DNA of 64,000 nucleotides, from the NCBI GenBank assembly GCA_977030845.1, contig OZ365109.1:56792001-56856000 (forward strand), read 5' to 3'. Below the pieces are notes generated by a model. The model made no database searches. It saw nothing but the letters and a program-made list of their open reading frames with translations, and was not told where the DNA came from. Of this stretch, positions 6,501 through 55,840 are shown one piece after another. Origin of the DNA: Fimbriosthenelais zetlandica. Its lineage: Eukaryota. How positions within the stretch are numbered: the first letter of the stretch is position 1; the number at the start of each line of letters is the position of its first letter. A program made the position numbers and the translations under genes.

Positions 6501-9500
6501 TTCTGTTGGTTATAATAATGGAAAATTTGGCTCCCACATCCCTGGTATGATTTTAGTGCTAGGCCTAGGGTAAATCCTGGCTGTTTCTGAATGAAACACA
6601 AACAACCTTACCTGGCAATGCCATTGTCGTCACCCTCTGGTCTTATTTTCATTCCACCTGAACTTGGTTTTCCCGAACAATTATCCAGATCATTCACTGG
6701 TCAGTGAGTGTATGACTTACCAACATTTATCCCTTGAACTATACTATAGCATTGTAAAGCAAAACTTGGCTTTGATTAAACATTTATTAACCTCGCCCCG
6801 CACGTCTATAGTCGGGCAGATACTCTATCTACCCCTATATGCTATGTACCTGTATTTTGCTACTAAAATGTCAGTTTTTGAGGGCAAACTTGTACATGTC
6901 AGTGGAACTTGCAGTGCTTGCCATGCTTAAAGCCAGCCATTGGTTCACCCATCATGCTTGCAGCATTCAGCAGTAACCTGCTGCACATCCTGCAACCCAG
7001 GCAGCATGGATGCCTTATTGATTTTCCAGTGGGGCGGGGAACCCTTTTCTGCGTTGCCGAAATAGGGTTTCATAGAACCTTCATACCCTTGCTCAGAACC
7101 CCAAGAACCCAATACTACAGGTTTCAGAGTCAGTTCTTTCAAATATTCCATGGTGCCATCTCCCATTGAAGCATAAGTCTTCCAGGCAGGTTCTGTTCTC
7201 TATTTTTTGCGTCGGAACATACTAGGTTCATGCTGGGATGTCTTGGGTTTCTAATTGTACCTATTTGGGTTTTTACCTAAATGTATTTGCCATGCAACCT
7301 GAGTTTCTAATCGGGTGGAAGGCAGCCTGCTGTGGGAGGATTTGCTATCGGCAGCATAGACATGGAAAGTAAATTTGGGTGAAAGGACAGTAACTGTTAT
7401 CCTCGCCAAGTTTTGTGGGTTTTATCTTGGCATATTCCCATATGTATACAAAAGACCGCCCTCCCATCCCACACGAGGATCTGATCTAAGATGATCCAAT
7501 CCTTTTCCATCTACCCATGAACACATCCACCTTTTCTTAACAACATAAATACTAATACCCACGACCTGACACAAGGCACCATTCATGAATTACTCCCACA
7601 CACCATACATGATCATTCCAACCGTCCGTAGTCCTTGACAGTAATTTTCTTCTTCACATTCCTGGAATCACTGGGATACATTACATGTATATAACCAATA
7701 CCAATTTAATGCGCAGATGTATAGAAACTGACCATTCAACCGGGAATGATGTAAACATATGTAAGAAACATTGCATTGGAATGACATCAACCCAAGATTA
7801 TTTTCATGGATAAAGAGTACACATATTAAGGTGCTACTCAGCCAGTCTTCTACACTCAGTGAACATCTAGGTCGATGGACTGGATTTTTCCCCACTTTAA
7901 TAATGCTCTGAATGCCTCCCTTATCTGCTGAAATATTTATTTGAGAGGTTCCTCAACTATTTTACTTGGATAATGTTGCAGGGTACATAAACCAGGAAGT
8001 TTATGTAACCATGACTACGTGATCATTATACCATGCAATATAAATATTTACAGCTGAGACACAAGATGGATTCTTATTATCTTATATAGATAGATATTTC
8101 AGTCTTAACACCAAAGTGTATTTCATGACATGGGATCCAATACCTACCTTAAACATAGGAAGGCAATAAACCATTGTATGTTATTCCCATAAGCCATTAC
8201 ATGTAGTACTAATGCATTGTGTTCATACTGAGGACATGGATATCCTTCTAACCTATACAGGTACTGCTTAATATGAGCTGCTAGCTCACATATTGAGTAG
8301 ATGAAAGAAAATCACACCTGGGGAATACTTAGCTGTACCTAAGCTCAACATTTTTACCAGCTGACGCCAATGGCCAAGCAAATAATGGGAGATTTTCAAA
8401 GCTCTGAATAGATTGATTTCCATAGGCCTGAAAAATACTCATAGTCATAGAGCTACCTGTTGAAATTTGTTGGATATAACTAAAAATAGGACTTCGTTCT
8501 GAGAACCAAGTGGACAAAATCACTTTTGTTCAGTCACCTCTTGGCTAATGTATGCTCCCTGCCAGACCTTTTCAGGAGAGTTGAAGTGAACAGATTGGGG
8601 GTGAAAACTGTGTACAAAAGTGAAAGTTACTTCACTACTGGACTGTACCAACTTGGCAATACAAGTTAGTGCATTTTCTACCTGGATAACTTCAGATTAT
8701 GGAATACTGATTTTAGACTGTGCAGTACTCGGAGAAAAATGTCCACTGTGTATCCCGGAGTCGAACCTGTACTCTCACAGGAATCACTGAATGGCACACA
8801 TTCCCTCCTCTGTTGTTTTTGGAGGAGAAAGAAAAAGGTCATTAATTTATCATATATGGACAAGGTCGTTCAAAAGTTTGATTTCATAGGATTAGAAATT
8901 TTCCTTGGATTGTTTTGGTTGATTATTTTAGATTTGTATAATTTTATGACTTTTTCTATCGAAGTTGATGAGTTAACAATCTGTACACCTGTTTTCGAAT
9001 TTGGTTGAATATTTAAATAAACATGTCTTTATATATTTATCGAATTACGAATTTTAATTTTTAGTTCAAATATTCAATGCACCTTATTCGTTGTAGAAAT
9101 ACCCAAAACAATAAATGGGGAAATGAAATTTCCACTGTTATTTTTCCTGTCCCTTATGCCCCTATTATCATCCAATTTACCCTTTATCATCATATTACCC
9201 TTTACAGTGTTTCATTTCTAAATAAAATTCTTCATTTTTTAAGGCTACTGCCGGATGGAATGGCCCGATCCGGAATGGTAAGCGTCTGGTTCCTGTCATA
9301 CAGAGAGCCCAGGGTCGTATGTTCTCTGTCCAGCATACTCTGCCAAGACTACCTGTACCCGCTCTAGAACAAACCCTCAATAAGTTCCTACTCACCATTG
9401 AACCGACTCTCTCAGAGGAGGACTACAGCCATGCTGTCAAGGTATTCGACGTTTTACTCATCTTGACCATTTTTTATGCATAAATGTTCAAAAAAATCAT

Positions 9501-18100: not shown

Positions 18101-21100
18101 CTTTTCCAACCTTTCACTCCTGTCCTTCCATTACATGAACAAGTCTATATAAATAATTATAGTCTTTTATATTTTTATTATTATGTGGTCCAGTCATGTA
18201 AAAGAAAAATTTGGGATGAACGGATTAATTGGCTTCAGTACTATTACTATGGCTTTATTATGTATCAAATGTTCAGGATATGTCCATCATATATGGTTTG
18301 GAAAATTATTTCCCGCTCATTTCTGTACCACTTCAATAGTCATGAGTAGGCATATAGTAGTCCTATATGTATGGTGTAAGTAATTGGAGGCTTCCTGTAT
18401 TCATGAAAGTAAAACAAAATATATTATATACATGCACTATAGGCCTACAACAATTCAAACAAAAATTATTGGGATGAAGAACTTAATTTCTTTTTCATAG
18501 TTTGCATAGGCCTATGCATGCCTACTTTGGAGAATATTTAATTTACATTGCAGCAAACTGATAATACACAAATAACGTACCCTGAGGCATTGTTTGTTCT
18601 TAAAGGGACCTCATACACCATATACAAAAGCTGCATGCATGCATACATTGAATATAATATTGGCCTTACATATCCCCCGACCAATATTCATCGTTTTTCT
18701 TGGGAGCGAATCACTCATCATGAAATATTAATAATTGTACATGCACCTGGCATGAATATACAGATCTATGCACCTCTCCGGGTTATATTTCAGCAACTTC
18801 TCTTGGCTCTGTGTCAAGGAGCCAGAGGCCGGTCCTGCTCGGCCCGGGACGGTGTTGGTTTGCCGGAGGTGGTTGGCCCTCATGCCGGTACCTCATTCTC
18901 CATGAGTGCGGGGATCCTTGACCAGAGTTTTAACAGTGGGACATGGACAGAGACCACCCACCTGATTATTATTATAGGCGTTAGCCCTAGGGAGAGGCAA
19001 ACTCGTGTATATTGTTAATGAGGGGTCAAGCAAACAGAGGACTGCAAATAAACACTTCTAAAATGACAAACGCTCCTTTCAAGCCCACTGTCCACTCATC
19101 TTCAATGGCCTTTCTACATTGTTTGATTGGAAGTGAAATGTCCCCTTCAGTCCTATTTTCCTAACATGCCTTCTAAAATGACCTTTAGTTGAAAAACAGT
19201 TATTATTACGGGCGTTTTTACTGCAGTACAGATAGACCTATACATGTACATTATTCTGTGGGCCTAATCATATAGGCCCTATCTGTGGAAATATTAGATC
19301 AGATCATAGTTTCCCTATAGCATATTAATTGAATATTTTAAAATAATTACTATATCCCTATAACGGTTTATAATGCTCAAGTTTAGTAGGTCTTTTATGG
19401 ATAAAGAGGTTATAGCTTCTATTCCATTAATAATGCCACCTATCTGTTTATATCATTTAGTGAAGTTTTCAGTTCTAAGATATTTGGTTGTGTCAGTCTT
19501 ATTTCTCTTATCTGTAACTTGAGACATCATTCGATCTGTAGCATCCCAGCGTCATCCCTCATTTCCCCATGACCTCTTGACCCTGACGGAGGCCCAGTGC
19601 TCTATGGGATCCAATGAAGCATGACACTGTGGCCTCCTCACCAGGGCGGTGCCCTGGAGATGCCCCCGTTCCCCCTCCCACCCAGCCGGCCACCCAGTCA
19701 CCTCCTCCCGGCTGGTCCTTATTAACATGTGACGATAGACATGATTCTGTCGGAGCATGTAATGGGAACATATTAGAGTTTAGACTTGACAGCTGCTGCC
19801 TATCGCTTAACATGTCAATGGGGCGTAATTGTTTGACCCGAGGGCTTTTATCAAAGATCCGAGGATATATATAGCCCATAAGTTATAATAGGTCTATATA
19901 CATGTTTTCATGGAAAACTTGTAGCCTAAAACTTAGGGTATTAGTAGGCCCATTAGCCCTGTGATTAGGCTTACTCTTCCCATCTCCTTTTAATTCATTA
20001 AGTCAAAAATGCATGATCGAATAACTTAATTGCAGGTAGGTCTATAAGCGGCCTAAATCATACCTTAAAATCTCGGCCCATTGAATTTATAACATATTTC
20101 AGGTTGATGGTGGACATCAATTACCTTATAAAGGGGCCTCTTAACCCGTCCTACACTATGACATGAAAATATTGATTATCCGTAGTTATTGACGTATAGC
20201 CAAGATATCTATGTCCCTCATATAATATGTGTCCAAGCTGTGAAATTTCTTTATTGATGTTCTCTCCCAGGGGACTGATCTCATATAGATTGACCACGTA
20301 GGCTAGGTATAGGCCTACATAAACCCCCTGAGCTGAGGGCAAAGGCACAAGGGGACAGGACTAGATAATTATAGGCTTTGGCCTAGTAGCCTAGAGTGTC
20401 ATGTCATGTATATATTTGAGACACATCTCAATGAAGGATTTAAACCATTGGGTATTAACGATGCTATTTCGAGATATAAACAAGAATGTGAGTCCTATTA
20501 GCAAAACACCGATATCCTCTATCATGGCTCCAAAATGGCGTTCTATGATGACCTTGCCTCGTGTGAAGGTCATTCGTTAGCCACGGGAGGCTCGAGGTCA
20601 GCAGGCGCCCTGTCTCGACATATTACCTTGGAGGGCACAGCCTCCAGTCATAAGGGTAAATTCTTCACGGATAGAAAAGAGGGAGGGTGCCAGTCAAGGA
20701 AGGGAGAGTTGCCGTTGATGCAGGGGGTTTTTAAAAGTAGTTTTACTTCTATTCTATTCAATTTATTGACTCAGATAGGCCTCATAAACACGACCTTTAC
20801 AAGTGCATATTGTAAAGTAACATTGAATAAATGTATTGAATATAAAATAGGATTTTGGACAGGATAGTTCTAAGGGTTGGGAGTGATCAGTGGACATTAG
20901 TAGGCCTACACCAATATACATTAGGACCTCGCCAGGAGGGTGCACTATTCCGGATGCAACTCGCACTTGGTGTCCCCCATCTCCGGATCCTCTCCAGGGT
21001 TAAGTTGTATTTCGATCCGCGTGTGGAATTCCATTGATCAGACAAGACCACACACACTATCCCTAAGAAACGTTCCACAGGATACTTAATATATTTGACC

Positions 21101-40690: not shown

Positions 40691-42125
40691 TGCTCGTCTC
40701 TGGAATTCTCTTCCAACTTCCGTTTGGGTAGCTACACAGATCACGCGGCGATCAGGTTAAATCTTGGCCATATACAACCATTGTTTAACCATATAGGCCT
40801 ACAACCATTGTATAGCAACAAGGATATTAATGCTAATGCTATTGTCTTTATGAGGCTTATAGAAATCAATGGCACCGCCCAAAACAACACTCCAAAACAA
40901 ACATGGTATCGGTATTGTGCCTAAATGTAATGATGCGTGTGAGTCCATGCTCTCGGAGGACATATTATCTCTGGTGTGAAAATAGCAATTCAAATTTCCT
41001 GAAGCAAACAACTACTGTACTTTTTTTAACTTATAGGCCCTACTTGAAGCTCCCTGTAGAGATTTGTTGGATACATCCTGCAAATAATATGTATACATAT
41101 AGCCTATATAGCTCATGAATAAACTCATGAAGTCAATAAAAGTTAATGTGCAGTAATTGCAAATCTATATGTATGCATACTTCATTATTATGTACATAAT
41201 TATAATTATGAAGGTTGAACTCTATTTAAAATGATTAACTTAACAGTTATTTACGCCTTTCTATTTGAACTTTTGACCTCTTGTCTTCCCTCCTCTTCAG
41301 ATTTCTATTAGTGCATTGTCGATATATATTGAAGGAATACTTTAAATTGTCATTCAATCGACGAGGTGTGCGATTGAATTTAAATGGCCACTTACAACAG
41401 CTTTGTGGTTAAAAGGGTCGGCGTTGACAGACTGAAGTCAGATTGGCAGTAAGGTACGGCTTCTGCTTCACTGACACTGAATTTGTGTCACTTTAAATTG
41501 GATGCGATGCTCGGTTACGTAATACCTTATACATAGGAAAATAACTATGCAGATCTCCAGCCTGGGTAATCAAAGTCTTAAACAAATTTGGGATTTGCGA
41601 GTCTTTGAAGCAAAGAGTGAGTATAGACAAGAGTGACAAGGGTAAGATTGGATCTAAAGGAATGGTAGCCCGGGGCAAATAATCGGAGTAAAAAGGAGAT
41701 TTCAAAGAATCAATGTATATAGCAAAGAGGGCTAAGACTTACACCTGTACCGTTCATAATAATTATAATGATATAAGAATTTCTTCTTTTTTTCTTTTTT
41801 TTTTACCAATGATTGCATGATTGCATAATTATATATGTGGCTATTTAAACATGTTTAGGCCTACTACACATAGACCAGAAATAGATCCATAACAAACTCT
41901 AAAATGTGTGCAAATAAAGAGCTTATTTGGTATACTTGGTACACATAATTTGCAGTTTTATAAAGGGAATTTCTCTTTAAAAAGAAATCATTTTTTCAGC
42001 ACATCCGCGTTCTCATCCCTAACATTATACTCTAAGTGCACTATTTGTCATTCATTTCATTGTGGCCTCTTTAAAAGATATATTGGAATTGTGGTAAAAA
42101 GTGGAAAGTTTGCTGAATGACTATA

Positions 42126-44543
42126 CACTGTTAAAAATCCAAAATGTTCAACAGTCTGGCGCCGTCCATACCTAATATAATATTTGCTCAGATGGCGACA
42201 CTACCCTGTCGCCGTCCAGCCTACTCCTGAACAGCATGCCACCGTTTGCGTAAAGCTTCAGAAATGCCGCCGTCCGACCGCTGATATTTCCATTGTCTAC
42301 CTCACCAATACACATCATACCACCCCGGGGGGCTATACACCCCTAGCCACCCTCTAACATTTAGAGTCCTAACTACCCACTAGTAACACCTAGGGTGTAT
42401 CAGACAAGATAAGGAATAAGGCCTGCAAATATTATGATTATACCTGAAGAAATTAATTATGAGACAAGGGGATGTATATTTGAGAAAAATAATCTCTCTT
42501 TGAATGTATATGAAAAGTTAAATATTTTAGAAAGAATTGAATTAACTTCAGAGAACAAAAATTTTTAAATTTGTTCTGGTTACCATGGAAACCATGACAT
42601 CGCATTGAATTTTGAGATTTTAAATTTTGTTTAACAATTTTACCTTATTTGTAAATAAGCAACCGGGAATTATAAAGTAGGCCTAAAGTTACATATGTAT
42701 AATAGCCTATAGTGTTAATGCACACAGGTCCCAAGTACAGTAAAATTTCAATAAAATCTATGACTTGAAGATTCCTTCTGCTACTCAGAAATTAACGTAA
42801 CCAACAGTTATAAAGGCATGTATAAACATGTCGTTTCGTGGTGGTCAAATTTGGTCACGCTTAAGTGACCACCACCTACTAACACCTCTGACTGGAGGAG
42901 GGTGATGGGTCTTAGGCATTAGGCGGGTAGGAGAAGTCCTACCAGTGGCCTTCACTGCAGTGAGGGAGAGAGGGAGGTCAGTTTCCCGTCAACTTTGAAA
43001 GAGGGAAGACATGCTTGACATGCTTCATTCATACGCAATGGTAAGCAGAATCCTTCACCATGTTTTCAACCGCTTATTATCTTGGGTTTTGTAATACCAA
43101 TAATAAAAGCCGACATGATTAAACATTACGTTTGTACATTGTTTCATCCTAATTTGATTATCATTTATCTTGCAGATTCAATATCTCATGACATATTCGG
43201 TGGAAGTTCGACAGGCCCCGGATTTTGGTATGTAATATTATTTATAATTGCTAAGTGGCGCAAATGGTCGCTCACAGTCATCTTCATTTTTCAGGAAACC
43301 TGTGAATTACAACTTATATTATTAACATGCCTGTTGGATTTAAAGTCCCTATTTCACACATTTTTGTCGATAGTGTGGCTTTGTGGACGCCAGTTTGCGC
43401 TAAAACAATTGGCCAGTCTACAATATATAACCTTATATTCATTATTGTATTTTTCAGACATTAGCCTACGCGTCAGAGATTCGGATTTCAGGTTGAGAAG
43501 CTTCCATAACTGTTTTAAAAGAGGTGAGATTTGCACAAATAATAAAAGGTATCATTTTTAAAATATAATATATTCAGTTATGTCTTAGCCTGCATCTCGC
43601 ATTATCTACCTCGCACAATTATAGTACATGTATACGTTTATTTACAGACTTCGTGTAGGCATGGACAACAATAGACCCACATATAGCCACACTAATCCGC
43701 CTATTGTCTCTGCCCCGCCACATCCCTCCACCTGGGCGGACGTGGCGGGCAGAGTCTTCAAAGGGGGGATTATAATTCTTAAAGTTTGAAACATTTATTT
43801 GTTGCACTAGTAATGATGTGACATTCTCAATAATGATATTGTTTCAAAAGTGTGCAAAACAGTTGAATATATATGCTTTTTTCACTTTAAGATAGGGGGA
43901 AGTGGGGTTGATTGATTCCCAAAATCTACTTAAATTTAGACAGAACTTGCAAACTTTTGAGATGGCGCTTAATGGAGATAAATTTTGATTTAAAATATTT
44001 CTTTTTTACTGCTTACACAATTTCATTTATTTTCAGGAAGAGAGAGCGAGAGAGTTATAACAACACATGGCTCATTTGGTTCAGGAATGTCATGCCACGT
44101 CTCCAAAGGCCAAGTCAACACTTCAATTGATGATCTCTATAATTATTGTTTAATAAAAGTTGGGGGAATAGGGGTGGGTTGGGAGGCGGGGCGGGTATAG
44201 TGGATGGGGGGACCGGGGCGGGGGCGGGGGTGGGGGTGGGGGTAGAGGCTCATATTATGGACCAATCAGGGTGGGGGTAGTGGCTCATATTATGGACCAA
44301 TCAGGGGCCGGGTTTCATGTGGCGCTCAGTGTGGTAAAGGGATTAGTGGGGACGGCGCGCTGTTGTAAAAGCTTAAGCCACGAACAGCGGCACGTTGTTT
44401 CAGTGTGCGACTGTGCGGCGACGCATAGACGGCGGGAATTAATGCGCTCTGACGGCGCGCGTCGCAATCCCGAAAAACCCGCCGCCTGGACATGCTCTGA
44501 ATATTGTCCAGACCATGACAGGCTGTTAGGATTATTAACAGTG
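42126..44543. mobile_element. TA-flanked CACTG...CAGTG element (CMC/EnSpm-like, non-autonomous, 2418 bp) carrying spliced cargo
   Basis: The TIR CACTGTTAAAAATCC matches the reverse complement CACTGTTAATAATCC at 14/15 positions, with TA on both flanks. Three subterminal CGCCGTC at the left (42160, 42210, 42268) are mirrored by three GACGGCG at the right (44351, 44428, 44451). The interior is C-rich at the left and G-rich at the right. Confidence 0.75.
43011..43658 (+). other. Candidate spliced micro-ORF or lncRNA: exons 43011-43040, 43176-43227, 43458-43523, 43648-43658 (52 aa)
   Basis: Donors GTAAGC, GTATGT and GTGAGA. Pyrimidine-rich acceptors TTATCTTGCAG, GTATTTTTCAG and TTATTTACAG. Introns of 135, 230 and 124 nt. 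Phases 0/1/1 give MLDMLHSYAMIQYLMTYSVEVRQAPDFDISLRVRDSDFRLRSFHNCFKRDFV. No homology recognised. Confidence 0.4.
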
Positions 44544-47500
44544 TAATATTTACTGAAATCTTCAGCTCTTCAATATTTACCCCCTCTTCTCCCGGACACA
44601 GAAAATAACGGTTATTCTATTCTGTCGGGGTTGGGGGAGAGTATATTGTTCTTTTCACCTCTCAAGTATATTGAACTAGGACCTCCTTTCACATAAACTT
44701 TCTCATGATAAATAAAGTGAAGACACCCATATCATACTTGCTGTCTTGAAGTCAACACACGGGCGTGATGTTCTCCACCTTGGTGATCTACCAAATATAA
44801 AACATTGCACCTAAAGCTTGTATATATTGCAGAAATATTGTGGGAGTTGCGCTGTCAAATACTTCATATATTTAGAAATGAACCTATAGGAAACATACAG
44901 AATCAAGAATTAACGTGTCTCTCAATAACAGTCAAAATATTTTGAAATGCTTCTGGAGTATAAATACATTCTGTATTCGTAACTAAGTATAAATTGATAT
45001 TTAATTAACAATTGAAATTAGGACAAAGATAAGTTAATTTTGATATAAGGGTTTTTGGTTAACTAGTGAACCAAAGGATCTAGTTTTAACAAGAGATTTT
45101 GTTTGACACAATGCTTAAAGCAACTGCTACCTTTGGAAATCCAGACTTCAAAGCCAGCAGGTTGTAAATGGACGGGGTTAGGTGGAGGGATATCCGGATA
45201 GTAACCCTACTTAAAGAGTCAGAGAAAGAGCTCATCTTGGCCTCATCAAGTCTTATTGTGGCAGTCTACCTGCTTTTATCTGGAATTCAATGCATCCAGA
45301 GACTTGGCGATTCCCAATGAAAACAAGGCCACACGATCCAAGGAGCTCTGAGGCTGAAAAATTGTAAAGCCAAAGGATAGGCGGATTGATTCCTGTGTTC
45401 AGTACTTGAGTCTGGTAGTGAATAGAGAATGGTTAATCGCTAAGGACAATCGTGAATAATTTCGTCTTTCAGCGGATAAGCTTCTTTGACTTCCGAGGGC
45501 CCAATTACCTGAGTCATATTGCATAATTATGCCTGTAAGCAATTTGCAATTCGGAGATCACAAATATTCTAGATAAGCTTCACATCATAGAGGAAAGGTA
45601 AGTCTAAATAAAAATACAGAAACATGAAGAAAATCTCCATTATTTTACAGAAGCAGAATAACTAGATTCCCTGGACTATAGCATGTGGCCATCTAATAGC
45701 AACTTTGACTCTTACTCAACACGCCTGGGTGTTCACGTGACTAAGAGGTACCTTCTGTTGGTTACTGATCACTAATGGAGCTAATTCCCGGAAGAGAGCG
45801 CGCCTTTCTGGCAGGGGAGTAAAGTGTCACTTGTCGCGCAGGAATACACACATCACAGCTCTATGACCCTAATGAGATCCCTGTACGCCCTCTACCGCTC
45901 TCTGCAGAATTAAACCTACTTTCTCAATCAGTCTCTGAGCTATGATGGAAGTCACCTTTTCTATGGAGGAAGTTCTCGCGTGAGGAGTTGCCCCTGTGAA
46001 AATGACCCCGGATCCCAGCCCTACTTTTGCATGCCACCTGCGCCGGAAGTTGGCCAGCCTCTGAAGGTGTCGCGCGCACGTCGTCTCTACCATCCTTCCG
46101 CCAAGAATCAAGAAACCGGACAAGGCGATCTTTTATCATCGATGGATGTCGCGTCAAAAAGTACACCTGCTTCCAGTGTTTCCCCTTGTATTGATCTGTG
46201 ACCTCACACATTCCAGCTCCTTAGTTTCACACACCTGCCTGGCAAAAATCATCAGGCCCTTTCTTCCTCCTCCCTCCTATCTTATTTGCTTGCATGGATG
46301 GAAATCGGAAGGGCGCCACAATGCGCCATACTATAGTCCACATTATGCTGGCTCAACGTGAAGAGACCAGTCCCAGACGTGCCTAGATCGCCATCAATAA
46401 TTATTATATATTTAGTAAATTATATTTGTTATTTTGTGATCTAGGTAGACCTAATGGAAATTCAAAATTTATAATATTATAGGCCTATAAGATTACCCGG
46501 TATTATTTCAATTCTAGATATATACCGTGTTGATTTGATGTTTTGGCTATATTATACATATGTAGGCTATACGTAGAAGTTTGAAGAGTTGGCCAGGTCT
46601 ATCAGTGTATCCAACACTTAATAGATATCTACCTTGAATTGGAGCTAACTGGCCAGGTTGAGTGGAGTTAAACTGATTGACTCTGAAATTAATGGTTCTT
46701 CAGATATCTCTCTCGTATCTACGGGTCCCAAATTCGCCACTCAAGTATGATCATGTGCACGTTAAAAGCATAAGTACACATAAGTGGTTATAAATAGCTC
46801 CCCCTTGTCTCCGGTCTGACTTAGTGACTATTTAAAATCTCCTCTGGATGGCATGGTCTCTATAAAGATAGGTTTAATCGGCTGGCCGTTTTCTGGATAC
46901 ATACTATACAATTCAAAAGGTCACCAAGCTGTCTGCCAGCATCACCAAGGGCATAGGTCAGGGGGAACCAATCAGAGATCCCTTTTATACGGGCCGCTGT
47001 ATGAAACCATATCCCTTCATTTGATTTACAGCAGATTCAGCTTCAAAGGCAGTGATGATTTTGATAGAAACCTGGAAGATTTTAAAAAAACTAATATATA
47101 ACATTATATGCCTTCCCTTCTTTGGCCAATGTGATTGTCTATGGCGTGTATGCACATGTGTAACTTGATTAACTGAAAATCATGAAAATGTTCAAAATGC
47201 ACAGCAGGTGGGAACGAAAATTAAGACATATATATATAGGAATTATTACCATACAATTTAAATGACGGTGTTCCATCATATCACCCTTCCAAATACCATA
47301 TGAAATGCAAAGATGATCAAGGTCCCATTTCTAAGGGACTCTAAAAGGCAAAATATGTAATTCAATAGTTCTTAGCTTGCTGTATGTGTATTCCCTTTGT
47401 TCATTACAAACCCCCATCTCTCAAATCAATCCGCCGGGAGCCCCGAGGGCACCCAACTGGAGCTGTATTCATTTACCTTCCGTCTAAGCAACTAAAGATC

Positions 47501-52625: not shown

Positions 52626-53948
52626 CTATTTGAGATAGAGGTAGGGTTTCACATTCATGACCTCTTCATCATGAGCCCAGCGTTGGTTATGATGATCATG
52701 GTTGGGACATATTATAGGGCCTTCAGTAAGGGCTGAATCAGGCCCTCCTGTCTCCGTACTCACAGTGCCTACACTCGCCTGATCATAGTGCTTTGGTTTC
52801 CGGTCACAACAGCAGCAGAAGAGATTCCGGGCCAGGGCACGGGCTTGATACCTCAGGTCTGTATCGATGAGCCAGAGAAGGGGACTGAAGCCAGCCGAGG
52901 CATAGCCGAGCCACACACAGGCCGACCAGACCATGGGATCCACACACATGCCCTCACAGAATGGAATCATGACGTTTAGGACGTAGAATGGAGCCCACAT
53001 GACGACCACCGACAGGTTGACTCCGACCACCGAGGCCGCGACGTTACCCACAGACGCTGTATCGACGAGCGCCAGGAAGTTGGAAGTGGAGTCGGGACAA
53101 CAACGCTGTTGGTAGAGAATCTGCGAATCGTTCATTCCATACAGGTGAGATTTGTGGATGCGCGTTCTTGATCTGAGAGCTGAGACAAGGATTGCCATGG
53201 TGACAAGAAGTCCCATGAATCCCGGTCCGAAGAAAGCAGCCAGACTGATTCCAATGGCATACTGACGGGTCATGCTAACGGCGCAAACTTCCTCAAAGAT
53301 CATGTCTGCGTCCTTGTACATCTGAAGGGCAGGGGGGATGATAGTTCCCAAGGCAACAATCCATGACCCAAGTACCAGGCCTAGAGCCCGCCCGGTACCC
53401 ATCCTTCTGTGGTAGTAGTAAGGTCGGAGGACATAGATGAATCTATCCACTGTTATAACGAAGGCCGACCAGAGAGTTAGAGAACTGAGGAACATTTGTA
53501 TGAGAAGCCATGCTCGACAGATTGTAGGGCCAAATGTCCAGCGTCCGTGGACTTCTGTGTTCACATTAGGGGGTACGACCATCACCCCCATGAGAAACTC
53601 CACAAAGACAAAGTTTATGATGAGTAAGTTGAGCGGGCGCACCCGTCCAAGTTTGGGACGCCTGGCAGCTGTGAAAAACATGTAGAGACATGATAAAAGG
53701 ATCCAGACAGCCAAAGCTGATCCACAATAGATAACAGCCATGCTTTGTGGTTTATGTATGACTATCCTCTCCGCTGATTTGTTCTGAAAAATGACCACCC
53801 AGGCGTCATGCCATAGGGTACCGTTATGGTAGGTGTGTTTGTGGTTAAGTCCAACACCCCAATGGTCGGAAACTTGAGGGTGAGTGTGGTGCGGCTGGAG
53901 GGGGCTGGGCCCGGCGGCCGCGGCCAATGATGGCACAATATTCGCCAT
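52626..53948 (-). CDS. Intronless class A (rhodopsin-like) GPCR, biogenic-amine-receptor-like orphan, 440 aa
   Basis: Long ORF with seven hydrophobic segments. It has N-glycosylation sites NGT and NKS, the ECL1/TM3 pattern GRWTFGPTICRAW, DRF, WAPF, WLGY and a C-terminal CCCC. The first ATG is at 53948; the track's extension to 53984 uses a non-ATG start. Confidence 0.93.
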   Translation of the reverse strand: MANIVPSLAAAAGPSPLQPHHTHPQVSDHWGVGLNHKHTYHNGTLWHDAWVVIFQNKSAERIVIHKPQSMAVIYCGSALAVWILLSCLYMFFTAARRPKLGRVRPLNLLIINFVFVEFLMGVMVVPPNVNTEVHGRWTFGPTICRAWLLIQMFLSSLTLWSAFVITVDRFIYVLRPYYYHRRMGTGRALGLVLGSWIVALGTIIPPALQMYKDADMIFEEVCAVSMTRQYAIGISLAAFFGPGFMGLLVTMAILVSALRSRTRIHKSHLYGMNDSQILYQQRCCPDSTSNFLALVDTASVGNVAASVVGVNLSVVVMWAPFYVLNVMIPFCEGMCVDPMVWSACVWLGYASAGFSPLLWLIDTDLRYQARALARNLFCCCCDRKPKHYDQASVGTVSTETGGPDSALTEGPIICPNHDHHNQRWAHDEEVMNVKPYLYLK

Positions 53949-55840
53949 TATAATTTGATTAGTCACGATCGTCCGACAACCCAATAGAAACTTCTGATCG
54001 ATGAGGGTGAGATAGCGATAGGCTTATTGCTTAACGCTTAAGACGGTTTTAAATGAAGCAACGAATGAGGCTCATTAATATCTGTCACCAAAGTTAAAAA
54101 ATAAAAAGTTTGTTTCACTTCTGTTAATTGGAGATATTACTTTCAAATGCTTTCGATTGGTGTGTGGCACCTCTGGCAATCCTTATGAATTATTCAAAGA
54201 TTGATTGTAATGATTGGGTAATTTGTCCAGTGTATTTTGGTAAACCACAAAGTATCTTGCTGACCCTTGAGGCCGGTCCACTTGCCAAAATTGCAGTCAG
54301 TGTAGTGGAGTGGCAGAAACACATTCATTGAGGTCCATGCACTAGAAGTTGTGTATGTAAATAAATATCACCTTGTGTTAAATTATTATAACCAATTCAG
54401 GACGACGTCCAAATGCACATGTGATGGATAAACCAACCCCTTTCCTTCGGCTATAACTGTAGGAAGGAAGGAACGTCTCAAAAGGTGAACACAGTCACAA
54501 CAATATACAGATGCCCAGTGAAAAGGTAGGACACTTCCTTCAGCAATTACTTCTCAAAACACTTGGCTGTTTGGTGGGCTTCCTGGGTTTATTTTTACAC
54601 TCCGTCAACTTGATCTCAAAGTTATACACCCCGAGTTGGGAAATACACATGAGAATGCCAGTTCAGACAAGCCTTTTGCCTTGAGCTTTAAGATGTCTGT
54701 GTGTACTTTTACGTCTCCTCCAGGCTATTTTCCCCTCCAACTTATTCCCTGAAGAAAACAGCTGCAGTGAAGCGCACTTATCTCCTCAAACTTCACAGCT
54801 GTGAAGTGTTCCTCTTTCACAGAGTTGGCAAATTAAAACAAAAAACCAATTAACACCCCTATCAAATTTCTGATGTGCCGACAGACCAGCCGTCAATGGG
54901 TTTCTGTCATCGCTCAGAAAAGCACCAAAAAATCAGATCAAAAAAAGCTTTGATTTGCGCCCAAAACTTTCTCAATCCGAGCTTGATTGATGCGTGGTGA
55001 TTTGATGATATATCATAAAGTTGTTCTCCAGCTGTGTGCTTGTGTTTTTGTCCAGGGGATCTGTGTTATAAGATCACCGGAACCAAGAGAACATGAGAAA
55101 TATCCGCCTCCTTCTCTTAGCCCTCTCACCCTCCTCCCAAATGTCGTCTGCCTTGGACTGGTCAGTGTCCAATGTTTCGCGCCCTCTTTCACTTGCGCCG
55201 CGGTCTCTGGTTGTGGTCAACGTCTAACTGAAGAAGATCCACTTTAAGAATGCTTTTATCTCTCCACCTCATCCTCCGCGACCGCATGTCCTCCCGCCGC
55301 CACCCTCGGTATCTTTAAGAAATGATAAGTAAAATTCTCCAGACGAAAAGCCTGGCGTCCTCGGTATCTCTCAATGTATGTAAATAATGTTAAATGCTCA
55401 GCGAAAATAAGGCCTAAATAGGGCCAATAGTCAGATTCCAGACGAGATGCGAGAAGAGAAATAAAACACCTGGCTAGTCACATATATCTCCCTGAACAGG
55501 TGGTGATCAACTTCTCAAGAGATGTAGCGCACAGGTGAGATAATCAAGTGAGGTAAGTCTTTTTGGTAGGTAGGTAGGCGTGAGTATGAGAGAAGAGGGA
55601 GTGGTAAGTGAGGGATGAAGCGATGTAGAGTGATGCCAGGCTTGTTCTGCTGCTTGGTTGGGCGAGCTTGAGTTATATAGGAAGATTCCCCCTCTCTTTC
55701 TCTGTGTGTCTCTCAGTCCTCCGTCTACCAGAGAAGCGCTGGTGTGTGTGGTGGGAGAGAGCGAGGAGGAGGTGGAGTGTGTGGACGGTGAGGGACCAAG
55801 AAGAAGTAGAAGAAGGCTGGCCAGTATATGACGCTGATCT

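What the first reader, a model, noticed from the sequence alone, without database searches (positions are those of the whole stretch)
42126..44543. Pack-CACTA-like element: an EnSpm/CMC-type transposon wrapping a spliced mini-gene and a CCAAT/GC-box promoter
Seen: a 15-bp near-perfect TIR starting CACTG, TA on both sides, and a 3+3 mirror array of CGCCGTC subterminal motifs. Inside are a phase-consistent four-exon ORF, a further acceptor at 44036, AATAAA near 44152, and GC boxes plus a 35-bp tandem duplication carrying CCAAT (44234-44268/44269-44303). Known: CACTA/EnSpm elements use subterminal transposase-binding repeats, animal members often have 2-bp TSDs, and gene-fragment-carrying Pack-CACTA elements are described mainly from plants. 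Inference: this is a non-autonomous element carrying captured or exonised cargo in an animal genome.
Basis: partly seen in the sequence, partly recalled or inferred. Interest (0 to 1): 0.75.

Follow-up and report, generated by a model that had tools for sequence, protein, structure and literature searches.

The report
Young non-autonomous CACTA-type transposon copy
This 2.4-kb stretch is one of roughly a hundred near-identical copies of a non-coding cut-and-paste jumping gene of the CACTA/EnSpm (CMC) kind, and the "captured spliced mini-gene" inside it is no better than chance, so it is a well-defined but ordinary repeat.

Summary
Window 42126-44543 has CACTG... termini (14/15 inverted repeat) and a TA duplication on both sides. 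All six CGCCGTC motifs of the 64-kb window lie in its two ends, three facing in from each side. It is one copy of a young family: about 113 left ends and 91 right ends in the 447-Mb genome, nearly all paired 2.3-2.6 kb apart. Twenty copies were fetched and 19 aligned; subfamily-A copies differ 0.4-1.1% from their consensus. All 20 share the whole interior. Transposition is shown directly: all 22 complete copies checked have matching 2-bp duplications (TA 18, TG 3, CA 1), and one paralogous empty site holds a single TA. Termini, the 2-bp YR target and the subterminal motif arrays fit CMC (CACTA/EnSpm/Mirage). A transposase-bearing CMC element in the same genome also has CACTG ends and a TA duplication. 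The "Pack" reading is not supported. The interior is family-wide, not cargo of this copy. The "four-exon ORF" has only 52 codons, which is chance level. It is stopped in the sister subfamily and broken in many copies, and no ORF matches Pfam. The GC-box/CCAAT module is a conserved family feature of unknown function. No autonomous partner was found and no RNA data could be obtained. The scan noted what is probably another copy before (s1-183047).

The parts
42124..42125 (.). left copy of the 2-bp target-site duplication (TA)
   Evidence: a single TA at the paralogous empty site
42126..42140 (+). left terminal inverted repeat CACTGTTAAAAATCC
   Evidence: the 24-mer starting here has 113 hits in the genome and 0 in the reversed control
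42156..42276 (+). left subterminal array: three direct copies of (G)CGCCGTCC at 42160, 42210 and 42268; presumed transposase-binding sites
   Evidence: (family D4)
43707..43755 (+). GC-rich internal hairpin (about 20 bp of stem)
   Evidence: -34.9 kcal/mol, z = -4.4; seen as an inverted self-match in other copies
44160..44243 (+). G-rich (GGGGYG)n tract with three GGGCGG boxes; its length varies between copies
44234..44303 (+). 35-bp tandem duplication, each unit carrying GACCAATCA (CCAAT box); 2 units in all 17 subfamily-A copies aligned and in L060, 3 units in subfamily-B copy L048
44340..44500 (-). right subterminal array, CpG-rich (22 CpG in 200 bp of the consensus): three inward-facing CGCCGTC at 44351, 44428 and 44451, plus a fourth, oppositely oriented copy in the consensus that is mutated in this copy (about 44480)
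44529..44543 (-). right terminal inverted repeat (reads CACTGTTAATAATCC on the - strand); the variant shared by 33 copies
44544..44545 (.). right copy of the target-site duplication (TA)

Best explanation
Window 42126-44543 is one insertion of a young, non-coding, non-autonomous DNA transposon family of the CMC (CACTA/EnSpm-Mirage-Chapaev) group. Shown: the element is bounded by CACTG...CAGTG inverted repeats. It duplicates a 2-bp YR target, usually TA. It exists in about 100 copies that share the full 2.4-kb body, and it has deletion derivatives down to 125 bp that still carry duplications. Inferred: a CMC transposase made elsewhere in the genome binds the CGCCGTC(C) repeats clustered in the first ~150 and last ~190 bp. 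It cuts at the CACTG termini and reinserts the element at a 2-bp staggered cut. Several CMC transposase lineages with 670-950-codon open frames are present in the genome. The body is carried along passively. The exon-like signals, AATAAA, G-rich tract and duplicated CCAAT unit are family features. They are most simply leftovers of the parent element's untranslated or regulatory sequence, or just sequence that drifted. They are not a captured working gene.
For: Family and fixed spacing: the left 300 bp and the right 300 bp each hit 40 scored places at 95-100% identity. The 24-mer of the left end has 113 hits and the 22-mer of the right end 91, nearly all pairing at 2.3-2.6 kb. All 20 fetched copies align to the whole element at 96-99%, or 88-92% for subfamily B. 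Subfamily-A copies differ 0.4-1.1% from their consensus; the window copy differs 0.83%. Transposition: 22 of 22 complete copies have matching duplications, TA 18, TG 3 and CA 1. In 88 flank readings the flanking dinucleotide is always Y-R. Paralogous empty site: the repeat interrupted by copy L050 is uninterrupted in L065 and holds a single TA there. Longer end-pairs are the same element with later insertions, for example an 8.7-kb Harbinger with a TAA duplication. CMC assignment: 5'-CA..TG-3' termini with 2-5 bp duplications characterise the CMC(T) group (PMC12730594). Animal CACTA relatives with 2-bp duplications are described (PMC1636069; PMC6004678). In this same genome a 15,160-bp element with CMC transposase ORFs ends CACTGCAAATCC... 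/ CACTGTAAGTCC... and has a TA/TA duplication. No coding capacity: no ORF is conserved between copies and there are no Pfam, Rfam or tRNA matches.
Against: No autonomous element with these termini or this subterminal motif was found. All long end-pairs are nested insertions. A pattern search for other CACTG termini followed by the same motif array found only satellites. The first 11 terminal bases differ at 4 positions, ungapped, from the one transposase-bearing CMC element I could read, so Repbase's 1-11 rule is not met against that element. PF02992 gives only one weak hit in this genome. The superfamily call therefore rests on terminal, duplication and subterminal features only.
Confidence: 0.8

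Rival explanations
1. Pack-type element: the body, or part of it, is a fragment of a host gene picked up by a CACTA-type element. It still works as a spliced mini-gene, and/or its GC-box/CCAAT module acts as a promoter.
For: The exon-like sites have good consensus (GTAAGC, GTATGT, GTGAGA; pyrimidine-rich CAG acceptors), and most are kept in both subfamilies. The G-rich/CCAAT module is present in both subfamilies, with 2-3 units. The right end is CpG-rich.
Against: The interior is common to about 100 copies, so any capture happened once, in the family's ancestor, and not at this locus. The ORF has 52 codons and is at chance level. Splice-like sites are not enriched. There are in-frame stops in 'exon 2' of subfamily-B copies L048 and L060 and of L050 and L057. 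There is a 118-bp indel inside 'exon 3', there are frameshifts in L045, L046 and L058, and splice sites are lost in 8 copies. Divergence between the subfamilies is fairly even along the element, with no excess conservation of the 'exons'. No Pfam match. A donor gene could not be searched for, because the own-genome search scores only the 40 best places and these are all family copies.
Confidence: 0.08
2. Non-autonomous member of a different TA-duplicating superfamily: Tc1/mariner/pogo, or a PHIS (Harbinger/ISL2EU-like) lineage with 2-bp duplications.
For: TA is the duplication in about 75% of insertions. PHIS lineages with TA or 2-bp duplications exist (PMC12730594). No CMC partner was identified.
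Against: About 25% of insertions have matched TG, CA or CG duplications, which a strict TA target does not explain. CACTG termini and multi-copy subterminal motif arrays are CMC hallmarks. The one Harbinger read in this genome has a TAA duplication and TAGGGGTGATCC termini.
Confidence: 0.1
3. Two chance inverted neighbours or independent short MITEs.
For: None found.
Against: The ends pair at a fixed spacing with the same interior genome-wide, and an empty site exists.
Confidence: 0.01

Closest known systems
Animal CACTA/EnSpm-related (CMC) non-autonomous elements with 2-bp duplications, e.g. SmTRC1 relatives, ENS1_Cis and CMC-NA MITEs, and Repbase 'EnSpm-N' type entries (PMC1636069, PMC6004678)
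   Same: 5'-CAC...GTG-3' termini, a 2-bp target duplication, no coding capacity, and mobilisation in trans is assumed. Classification rests on termini and duplication when no partner is known.
   Different: It is much longer (2.4 kb) than a MITE and has a strongly conserved body. It has clear CGCCGTC subterminal arrays. The target is YR, mostly TA, rather than any dinucleotide.
Maize En/Spm (dSpm) and plant CACTA elements
   Same: CACT(A/G) termini, short motifs repeated in direct and inverted orientation in both subterminal regions, a GC/CpG-rich region next to one end, and internally deleted non-autonomous derivatives.
   Different: Plant elements make 3-bp duplications. Here no transposase or TnpA-like gene is linked to the family, and the terminal pentamer is CACTG.
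Pack-CACTA / Pack-MULE elements of plants (from my own knowledge; no paper on them was read here)
   Same: A non-autonomous body between transposon ends, with exon-like signals.
   Different: Pack elements carry recognisable fragments of identifiable host genes, and the cargo often differs between family members. Here every copy has the same body, no donor is known, and no protein similarity exists.
15-kb two-gene CMC element of the same genome (C1:62696522-62711681; L072/L073)
   Same: CACTG termini and a TA/TA duplication. Its right terminus CACTGTAAGTCCAA resembles CACTGTTAAAAATCCAA if a 3-base gap is allowed.
   Different: No DNA similarity beyond the terminus, it lacks the CGCCGTC motif, and it encodes a transposase.

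Membership tests
Class II cut-and-paste DNA transposon (non-autonomous) | Terminal inverted repeats at precisely conserved boundaries in many copies | tested here: met
   All 21 full copies start CACTGTTAAAAATCC and end ...AACAGTG, and their flanks are unrelated.
Class II cut-and-paste DNA transposon (non-autonomous) | Target-site duplication created on insertion, with an empty site available | tested here: met
   22/22 matched 2-bp duplications, including TG and CA. A paralogous empty site holds a single TA.
Class II cut-and-paste DNA transposon (non-autonomous) | No transposase ORF of its own | tested here: met
   The longest ORF is 159 aa and is not conserved. There is no Pfam match, and tblastn with two CMC transposases finds nothing.
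CMC (CACTA/EnSpm-Mirage-Chapaev) superfamily | 5'-CAC(T)..GTG-3' termini | tested here: met
   CACTG...CAGTG; criterion from PMC12730594 and PMC6004678.
CMC (CACTA/EnSpm-Mirage-Chapaev) superfamily | Short (2-4 bp) target-site duplication | tested here: met
   2 bp.
CMC (CACTA/EnSpm-Mirage-Chapaev) superfamily | Subterminal arrays of a short repeated motif in both ends | tested here: met
   Six CGCCGTC, 3 + 3 mirrored, against 0.94 expected in 64 kb. The arrays are conserved in the family consensus.
CMC (CACTA/EnSpm-Mirage-Chapaev) superfamily | An autonomous partner with the same termini that encodes a CMC DDE transposase with C(2)C / H(3-4)H motifs | tested here: inconclusive
   CMC transposase lineages exist in the genome, but none lies near a family terminus. 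No long copy carries a transposase. Further loci could not be fetched.
CMC (CACTA/EnSpm-Mirage-Chapaev) superfamily | Repbase rule for non-autonomous elements: same duplication length and terminal bases 1-11 matching a classified element with at most 1 mismatch | tested here: not met
   Against the one transposase-bearing CMC element read here, the duplication length is equal, but bases 1-11 differ at 4 positions ungapped. Repbase itself was not available, so this is a test against a single element.
Pack-CACTA (gene-fragment-carrying CACTA) | The interior is recognisably derived from a host gene (donor identified, or protein similarity) | tested here: inconclusive
   No Pfam or Rfam similarity. 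A donor search in the genome was not possible because family copies fill the 40 scored places.
Pack-CACTA (gene-fragment-carrying CACTA) | Captured exons give a conserved or expressed ORF | tested here: not met
   A 52-codon ORF at chance level, broken in subfamily B and in many copies. Expression was not testable.
Tc1/mariner | Strict TA target duplication | tested here: not met
   Matched TG/TG (3) and CA/CA (1) duplications; about 25% of flanks are not TA.

The most novel reading that the evidence does not exclude
The conserved CpG-rich right end, with its G-rich tract and duplicated CCAAT unit, is a working promoter present at about 100 recently inserted loci. It would then either drive an unrecognised non-coding or spliced transcript of the element, or read out into neighbouring host genes. 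In addition, the 2.4-kb body would descend from a host gene fragment picked up by the family's ancestor, which would be a Pack-type capture in an animal that has since amplified.
Probability: 0.1. Interest if true: 0.5.

Novelty: new member of a known kind. Interest (0 to 1): 0.2.

Why it matters
The element has clean boundaries, a demonstrated empty site, about 100 copies and under 1% divergence. That makes it a good marker of very recent, possibly ongoing, DNA-transposon activity in this invertebrate genome, and a clear example of the 2-bp, mostly-TA target of animal CMC elements. It is useful for annotating the genome's repeats and for interpreting other copies that first readers have flagged as 'multi-exon inserts'. 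It does not show gene capture or a new mechanism.

Tried and rejected
1. Autonomous partner. All end-pairs more than 3 kb apart were fetched (L054, L059, L061-L065, L070). All are the same element with nested insertions or fragments. tblastn with two CMC transposases found nothing in them or in the window.
2. PF02992 in the own genome gave one weak hit, a decayed CMC transposase at C39:3790273. It has no family termini or motif within 17 kb.
3. A protein search with the CMC transposase of L072 found about 9 further lineages with long open frames. I did not use pattern output to read letters around that limit.
4. The pattern CACTG(not T)...GCCGTCC...GCCGTCC, meant to find sister families with the same binding motif, hit only satellites.
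I did not resend it, so read laying could not be used. No RNA-seq junctions and no polymorphic empty allele were examined.
6. Rfam and tRNA scans gave only sub-threshold chance hits.
7. A metagenome scan for the left 24-mer gave 0 matches.
8. Organism identification through the neighbouring GPCR in the protein atlas was uninformative.
9. The 5' end of the 15-kb CMC element was checked for a comparable GC-box/CCAAT architecture. It has none.
10. The spliced model was never joined for any search. Exons were only read in place, and the simulation used the element by reference.

Full report
WHAT IS THERE. The sequence at 42126-44543 begins CACTGTTAAAAATCC and ends GGATTATTAACAGTG, a 14/15 inverted repeat, with TA immediately outside both ends. 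The heptamer CGCCGTC occurs six times in the whole 64-kb window, against 0.94 expected; none of 100 shuffles reaches six. All six lie in the element. Three are on the + strand within 150 bp of the left end (42160, 42210, 42268). Three are on the - strand within 190 bp of the right end (44351, 44428, 44451). The 35-bp tandem duplication with CCAAT (44234-44303), the AATAAA at 44152, the acceptor-like AG at 44035-44036 and the GGGCGG boxes are also present as described. A scan of the window for other CACTG...CAGTG pairs with matching flanks found only this one.

IT IS A FAMILY, NOT A ONE-OFF. In the window's own 447-Mb genome, the left 300 bp and the right 300 bp each match 40 scored places at 95-100% identity, out of 125 and 101 first-look candidates. 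The left-end 24-mer has 113 hits and the right-end 22-mer has 91, with none in the reversed-pattern control. Almost every left end has a right end 2.3-2.6 kb away in the right orientation. I fetched 20 copies with flanks. All align to the window copy over its whole length. Most are 96-99% identical; the copies of a second subfamily, whose right terminus reads GGATTTGTAACAGTG, are 88-92% identical. In an alignment of 19 copies, subfamily-A copies differ from their consensus by 0.4-1.1% (the window copy by 0.83%). Three copies differ by about 2.5% and the two subfamily-B copies by 4-5%. By right terminus there are 33 copies of the window's variant, about 41 of ...TTTGTAAC... and 16 of ...TTTATAAC.... 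But the interior is equally not special to this locus.

IT HAS TRANSPOSED, WITH A 2-BP DUPLICATION. The 21 full copies have unrelated flanks and matching dinucleotides on both sides: TA in 18, TG in 2 and CA in 1. A 125-bp deletion derivative (33 bp of the left end plus 96 bp of the right end) at C10:21506109-21506233 has TG/TG. Over 88 flank readings from all held loci, the flanking dinucleotide is always pyrimidine-purine: TA about 75%, CA/TG about 22% and CG about 3%. One copy (C1:5764324-5766746, L050) sits inside another repeat, and an uninterrupted copy of that repeat lies in L065. At the matching point the uninterrupted copy reads ...cccttaTActgttggtaaac..., while the filled site reads ...cctttaTA[element]TAgtgttggtaaac.... 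This is a paralogous empty site with a single TA. It fixes the boundaries and the 2-bp duplication.

LONGER COPIES ARE NESTED INSERTIONS. End-pairs 3.4-14 kb apart were fetched. Each is the same element interrupted at one point, or a fragment. The 10.6-kb case carries an 8.7-kb PIF/Harbinger element at family position 1461. That element has a DDE_Tnp_4-like ORF and a MADF-like ORF, termini TAGGGGTGATCCACC and a TAA duplication. None contains a CMC transposase.

WHICH SUPERFAMILY. CACTG termini, a 2-bp duplication and arrays of a short motif in both subterminal regions are the hallmarks used to place non-autonomous elements in CMC (CACTA/EnSpm-Mirage-Chapaev). The CMC(T) group shares 5'-CA..TG-3' termini and makes 2-5 bp duplications (PMC12730594). 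Animal CACTA relatives with 2-bp duplications have been described since SmTRC1 (PMC1636069), and CMC MITEs have been classified in exactly this way (PMC6004678). It carries CMC-type transposase ORFs, ends CACTGCAAATCC... and, on the other strand, CACTGTAAGTCC..., and is flanked by TA/TA. Bona fide CMC elements of this genome therefore have the same terminal pentamer and the same duplication. With its transposase as query, the genome shows about nine further CMC lineages with 670-950-codon open frames, so sources of transposase exist. A strict-TA superfamily (Tc1/mariner) is contradicted by the matched TG and CA duplications. The one Harbinger seen here looks quite different.

The weak point is that I could not find the autonomous partner. 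No transposase lies near any family terminus. No other element combines a CACTG end with the CGCCGTC array. Against the single classified element available, Repbase's 'bases 1-11, one mismatch' rule is not met: there are 4 mismatches ungapped, although the termini are similar if a 3-base gap is allowed. I therefore put CMC membership at about 0.8.

THE 'SPLICED MINI-GENE'. Read out in place, the four 'exons' are 43011-43040, 43176-43227, 43458-43523 and 43648-43659. They give 52 codons, ending three codons into the fourth. I never joined them for a search. The test of chance used the element by reference. With donors GTRNG, pyrimidine-rich YAG acceptors and introns of 60-450 nt, 54 of 60 dinucleotide shuffles of the element contain a spliced ORF of at least 52 codons with no more than three introns; the mean best is 88 codons. 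Donor- and acceptor-like sites are no more frequent than in shuffles. Across copies the model does not hold:
- Both subfamily-B copies have in-frame stops in 'exon 2' and 118 extra bases inside 'exon 3'.
- L050 and L057 have stops in 'exon 2'.
- L045, L046 and L058 have a 1-bp deletion in 'exon 3'.
- L055 has lost a donor, and L049 has lost the 'exon 2' donor region by deletion.
- Six copies lack the last acceptor.
Divergence between the subfamilies is fairly even along the element, and the 'exons' do not stand out. Seven ORFs of the element have no Pfam match at E up to 1. No ORF of 70 aa or more recurs intact across copies. Rfam and tRNA scans are empty. The mini-gene is therefore not supported by the sequence.

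THE 'PROMOTER'. The G-rich tract is a (GGGGYG)n array whose length varies from copy to copy. The CCAAT-bearing 35-bp unit is present twice in every subfamily-A copy and three times in one subfamily-B copy. The last about 220 bp are CpG-rich: 22 CpG in 200 bp of the consensus, with a CpG observed/expected ratio of 0.72 for the whole element. This module is a conserved family feature next to one subterminal array. From general knowledge, it recalls the position of the promoter and GC-rich downstream control region of maize En/Spm. It may be the remnant of the parent element's promoter or leader, which would make the right end the element's 5' end. That is inference only. The 15-kb CMC element read here has no comparable module.

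HOW IT MOST LIKELY WORKS. Shown: precise CACTG...CAGTG ends; a 2-bp YR duplication; an empty site; about 100 young copies; deletion derivatives that retain only the ends and still carry duplications. Inferred: a CMC transposase supplied in trans binds the CGCCGTC(C) repeats, brings the ends together, cuts at the termini and integrates the element at a 2-bp staggered cut with a strong preference for TA. The 2.4-kb body is a passenger.

CONTEXT. No convincing coding ORF lies within about 10 kb of the element. The nearest long ORF is a single-exon GPCR at 52626-53984 on the - strand. No effect of this insertion on a host gene is apparent.

VERDICT. This is a real, sharply bounded, recently amplified non-autonomous CMC-type transposon. 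The structural observation is confirmed. The 'Pack', mini-gene and cargo interpretation is not supported. It is an ordinary new member of a known kind. The scan had already flagged what is probably another copy of this family ('CACTG-ended insert carrying a multi-exon, phase-compatible but stop-containing transcript', s1-183047, 2479 letters). I could not check that identity.

Noticed in passing
L062:659-9385 (G000:C23, inside a family copy): An 8.7-kb PIF/Harbinger element is nested at family position 1461. It has a TAA duplication, termini TAGGGGTGATCCACCGAGC, a DDE_Tnp_4-like ORF (7229-7738, -) and a MADF-like ORF (943-1557, +).
   Followed up: partly
L066:201-325 (G000:C10:21506109-21506233): A 125-bp MITE-sized deletion derivative of the family (33 bp of the left end plus 96 bp of the right end), with a TG/TG duplication. 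It shows that the ends alone suffice for insertion.
   Followed up: yes
G000:C21:46156-48063, C21:200548-202455, C22:3884334-3886241, C22:3983308-3985215, C23:2621189-2623096: Five copies are all exactly 1908 bp. They are either a deletion subfamily that has amplified, or one insertion carried along by segmental duplications. Not resolved.
   Followed up: no
window 43707-43755: A GC-rich hairpin (CTCTGCCCCGCCAC...GTGGCGGGCAGAG) lies inside the element: -34.9 kcal/mol, z = -4.4. It is present in other copies too and gives only a sub-threshold miRNA-model hit. Its function is unknown.
   Followed up: partly
L072+L073, 523-15682 (G000:C1:62696522-62711681): A 15,160-bp CMC element with a four-fold internal tandem repeat of its transposase ORFs, termini CACTGCAAATCC / CACTGTAAGTCC and a TA/TA duplication. 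The right flank of family copy L041 matches its left subterminal region at 89%.
   Followed up: partly
L068:7346-8823 (G000:C39:3790345-3791822): A decayed CMC/Transposase_21-like transposase remnant (ORFs of 292 and 210 aa). It is the only PF02992 hit in the genome, and it falls below the cut-off.
   Followed up: partly
L065:1238-1623 and the flanks of L050: An unidentified interspersed repeat (about 86% identity between the two copies). It is the target of one family insertion and is itself nested inside another family copy.
   Followed up: no
window 52626-53984 (-): A single-exon 452-codon ORF whose nearest atlas clusters are rhodopsin-type GPCRs (GPR75-like and prostanoid-receptor-like, scores 0.96-0.97). 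It is the only ORF of 200 aa or more in the window.
   Followed up: no
window 18924-18938 (-): A 13/15 match to the family terminus (CACTGTTAAAACTCT), with no partner end and no CGCCGTC motif nearby. Probably chance.
   Followed up: partly
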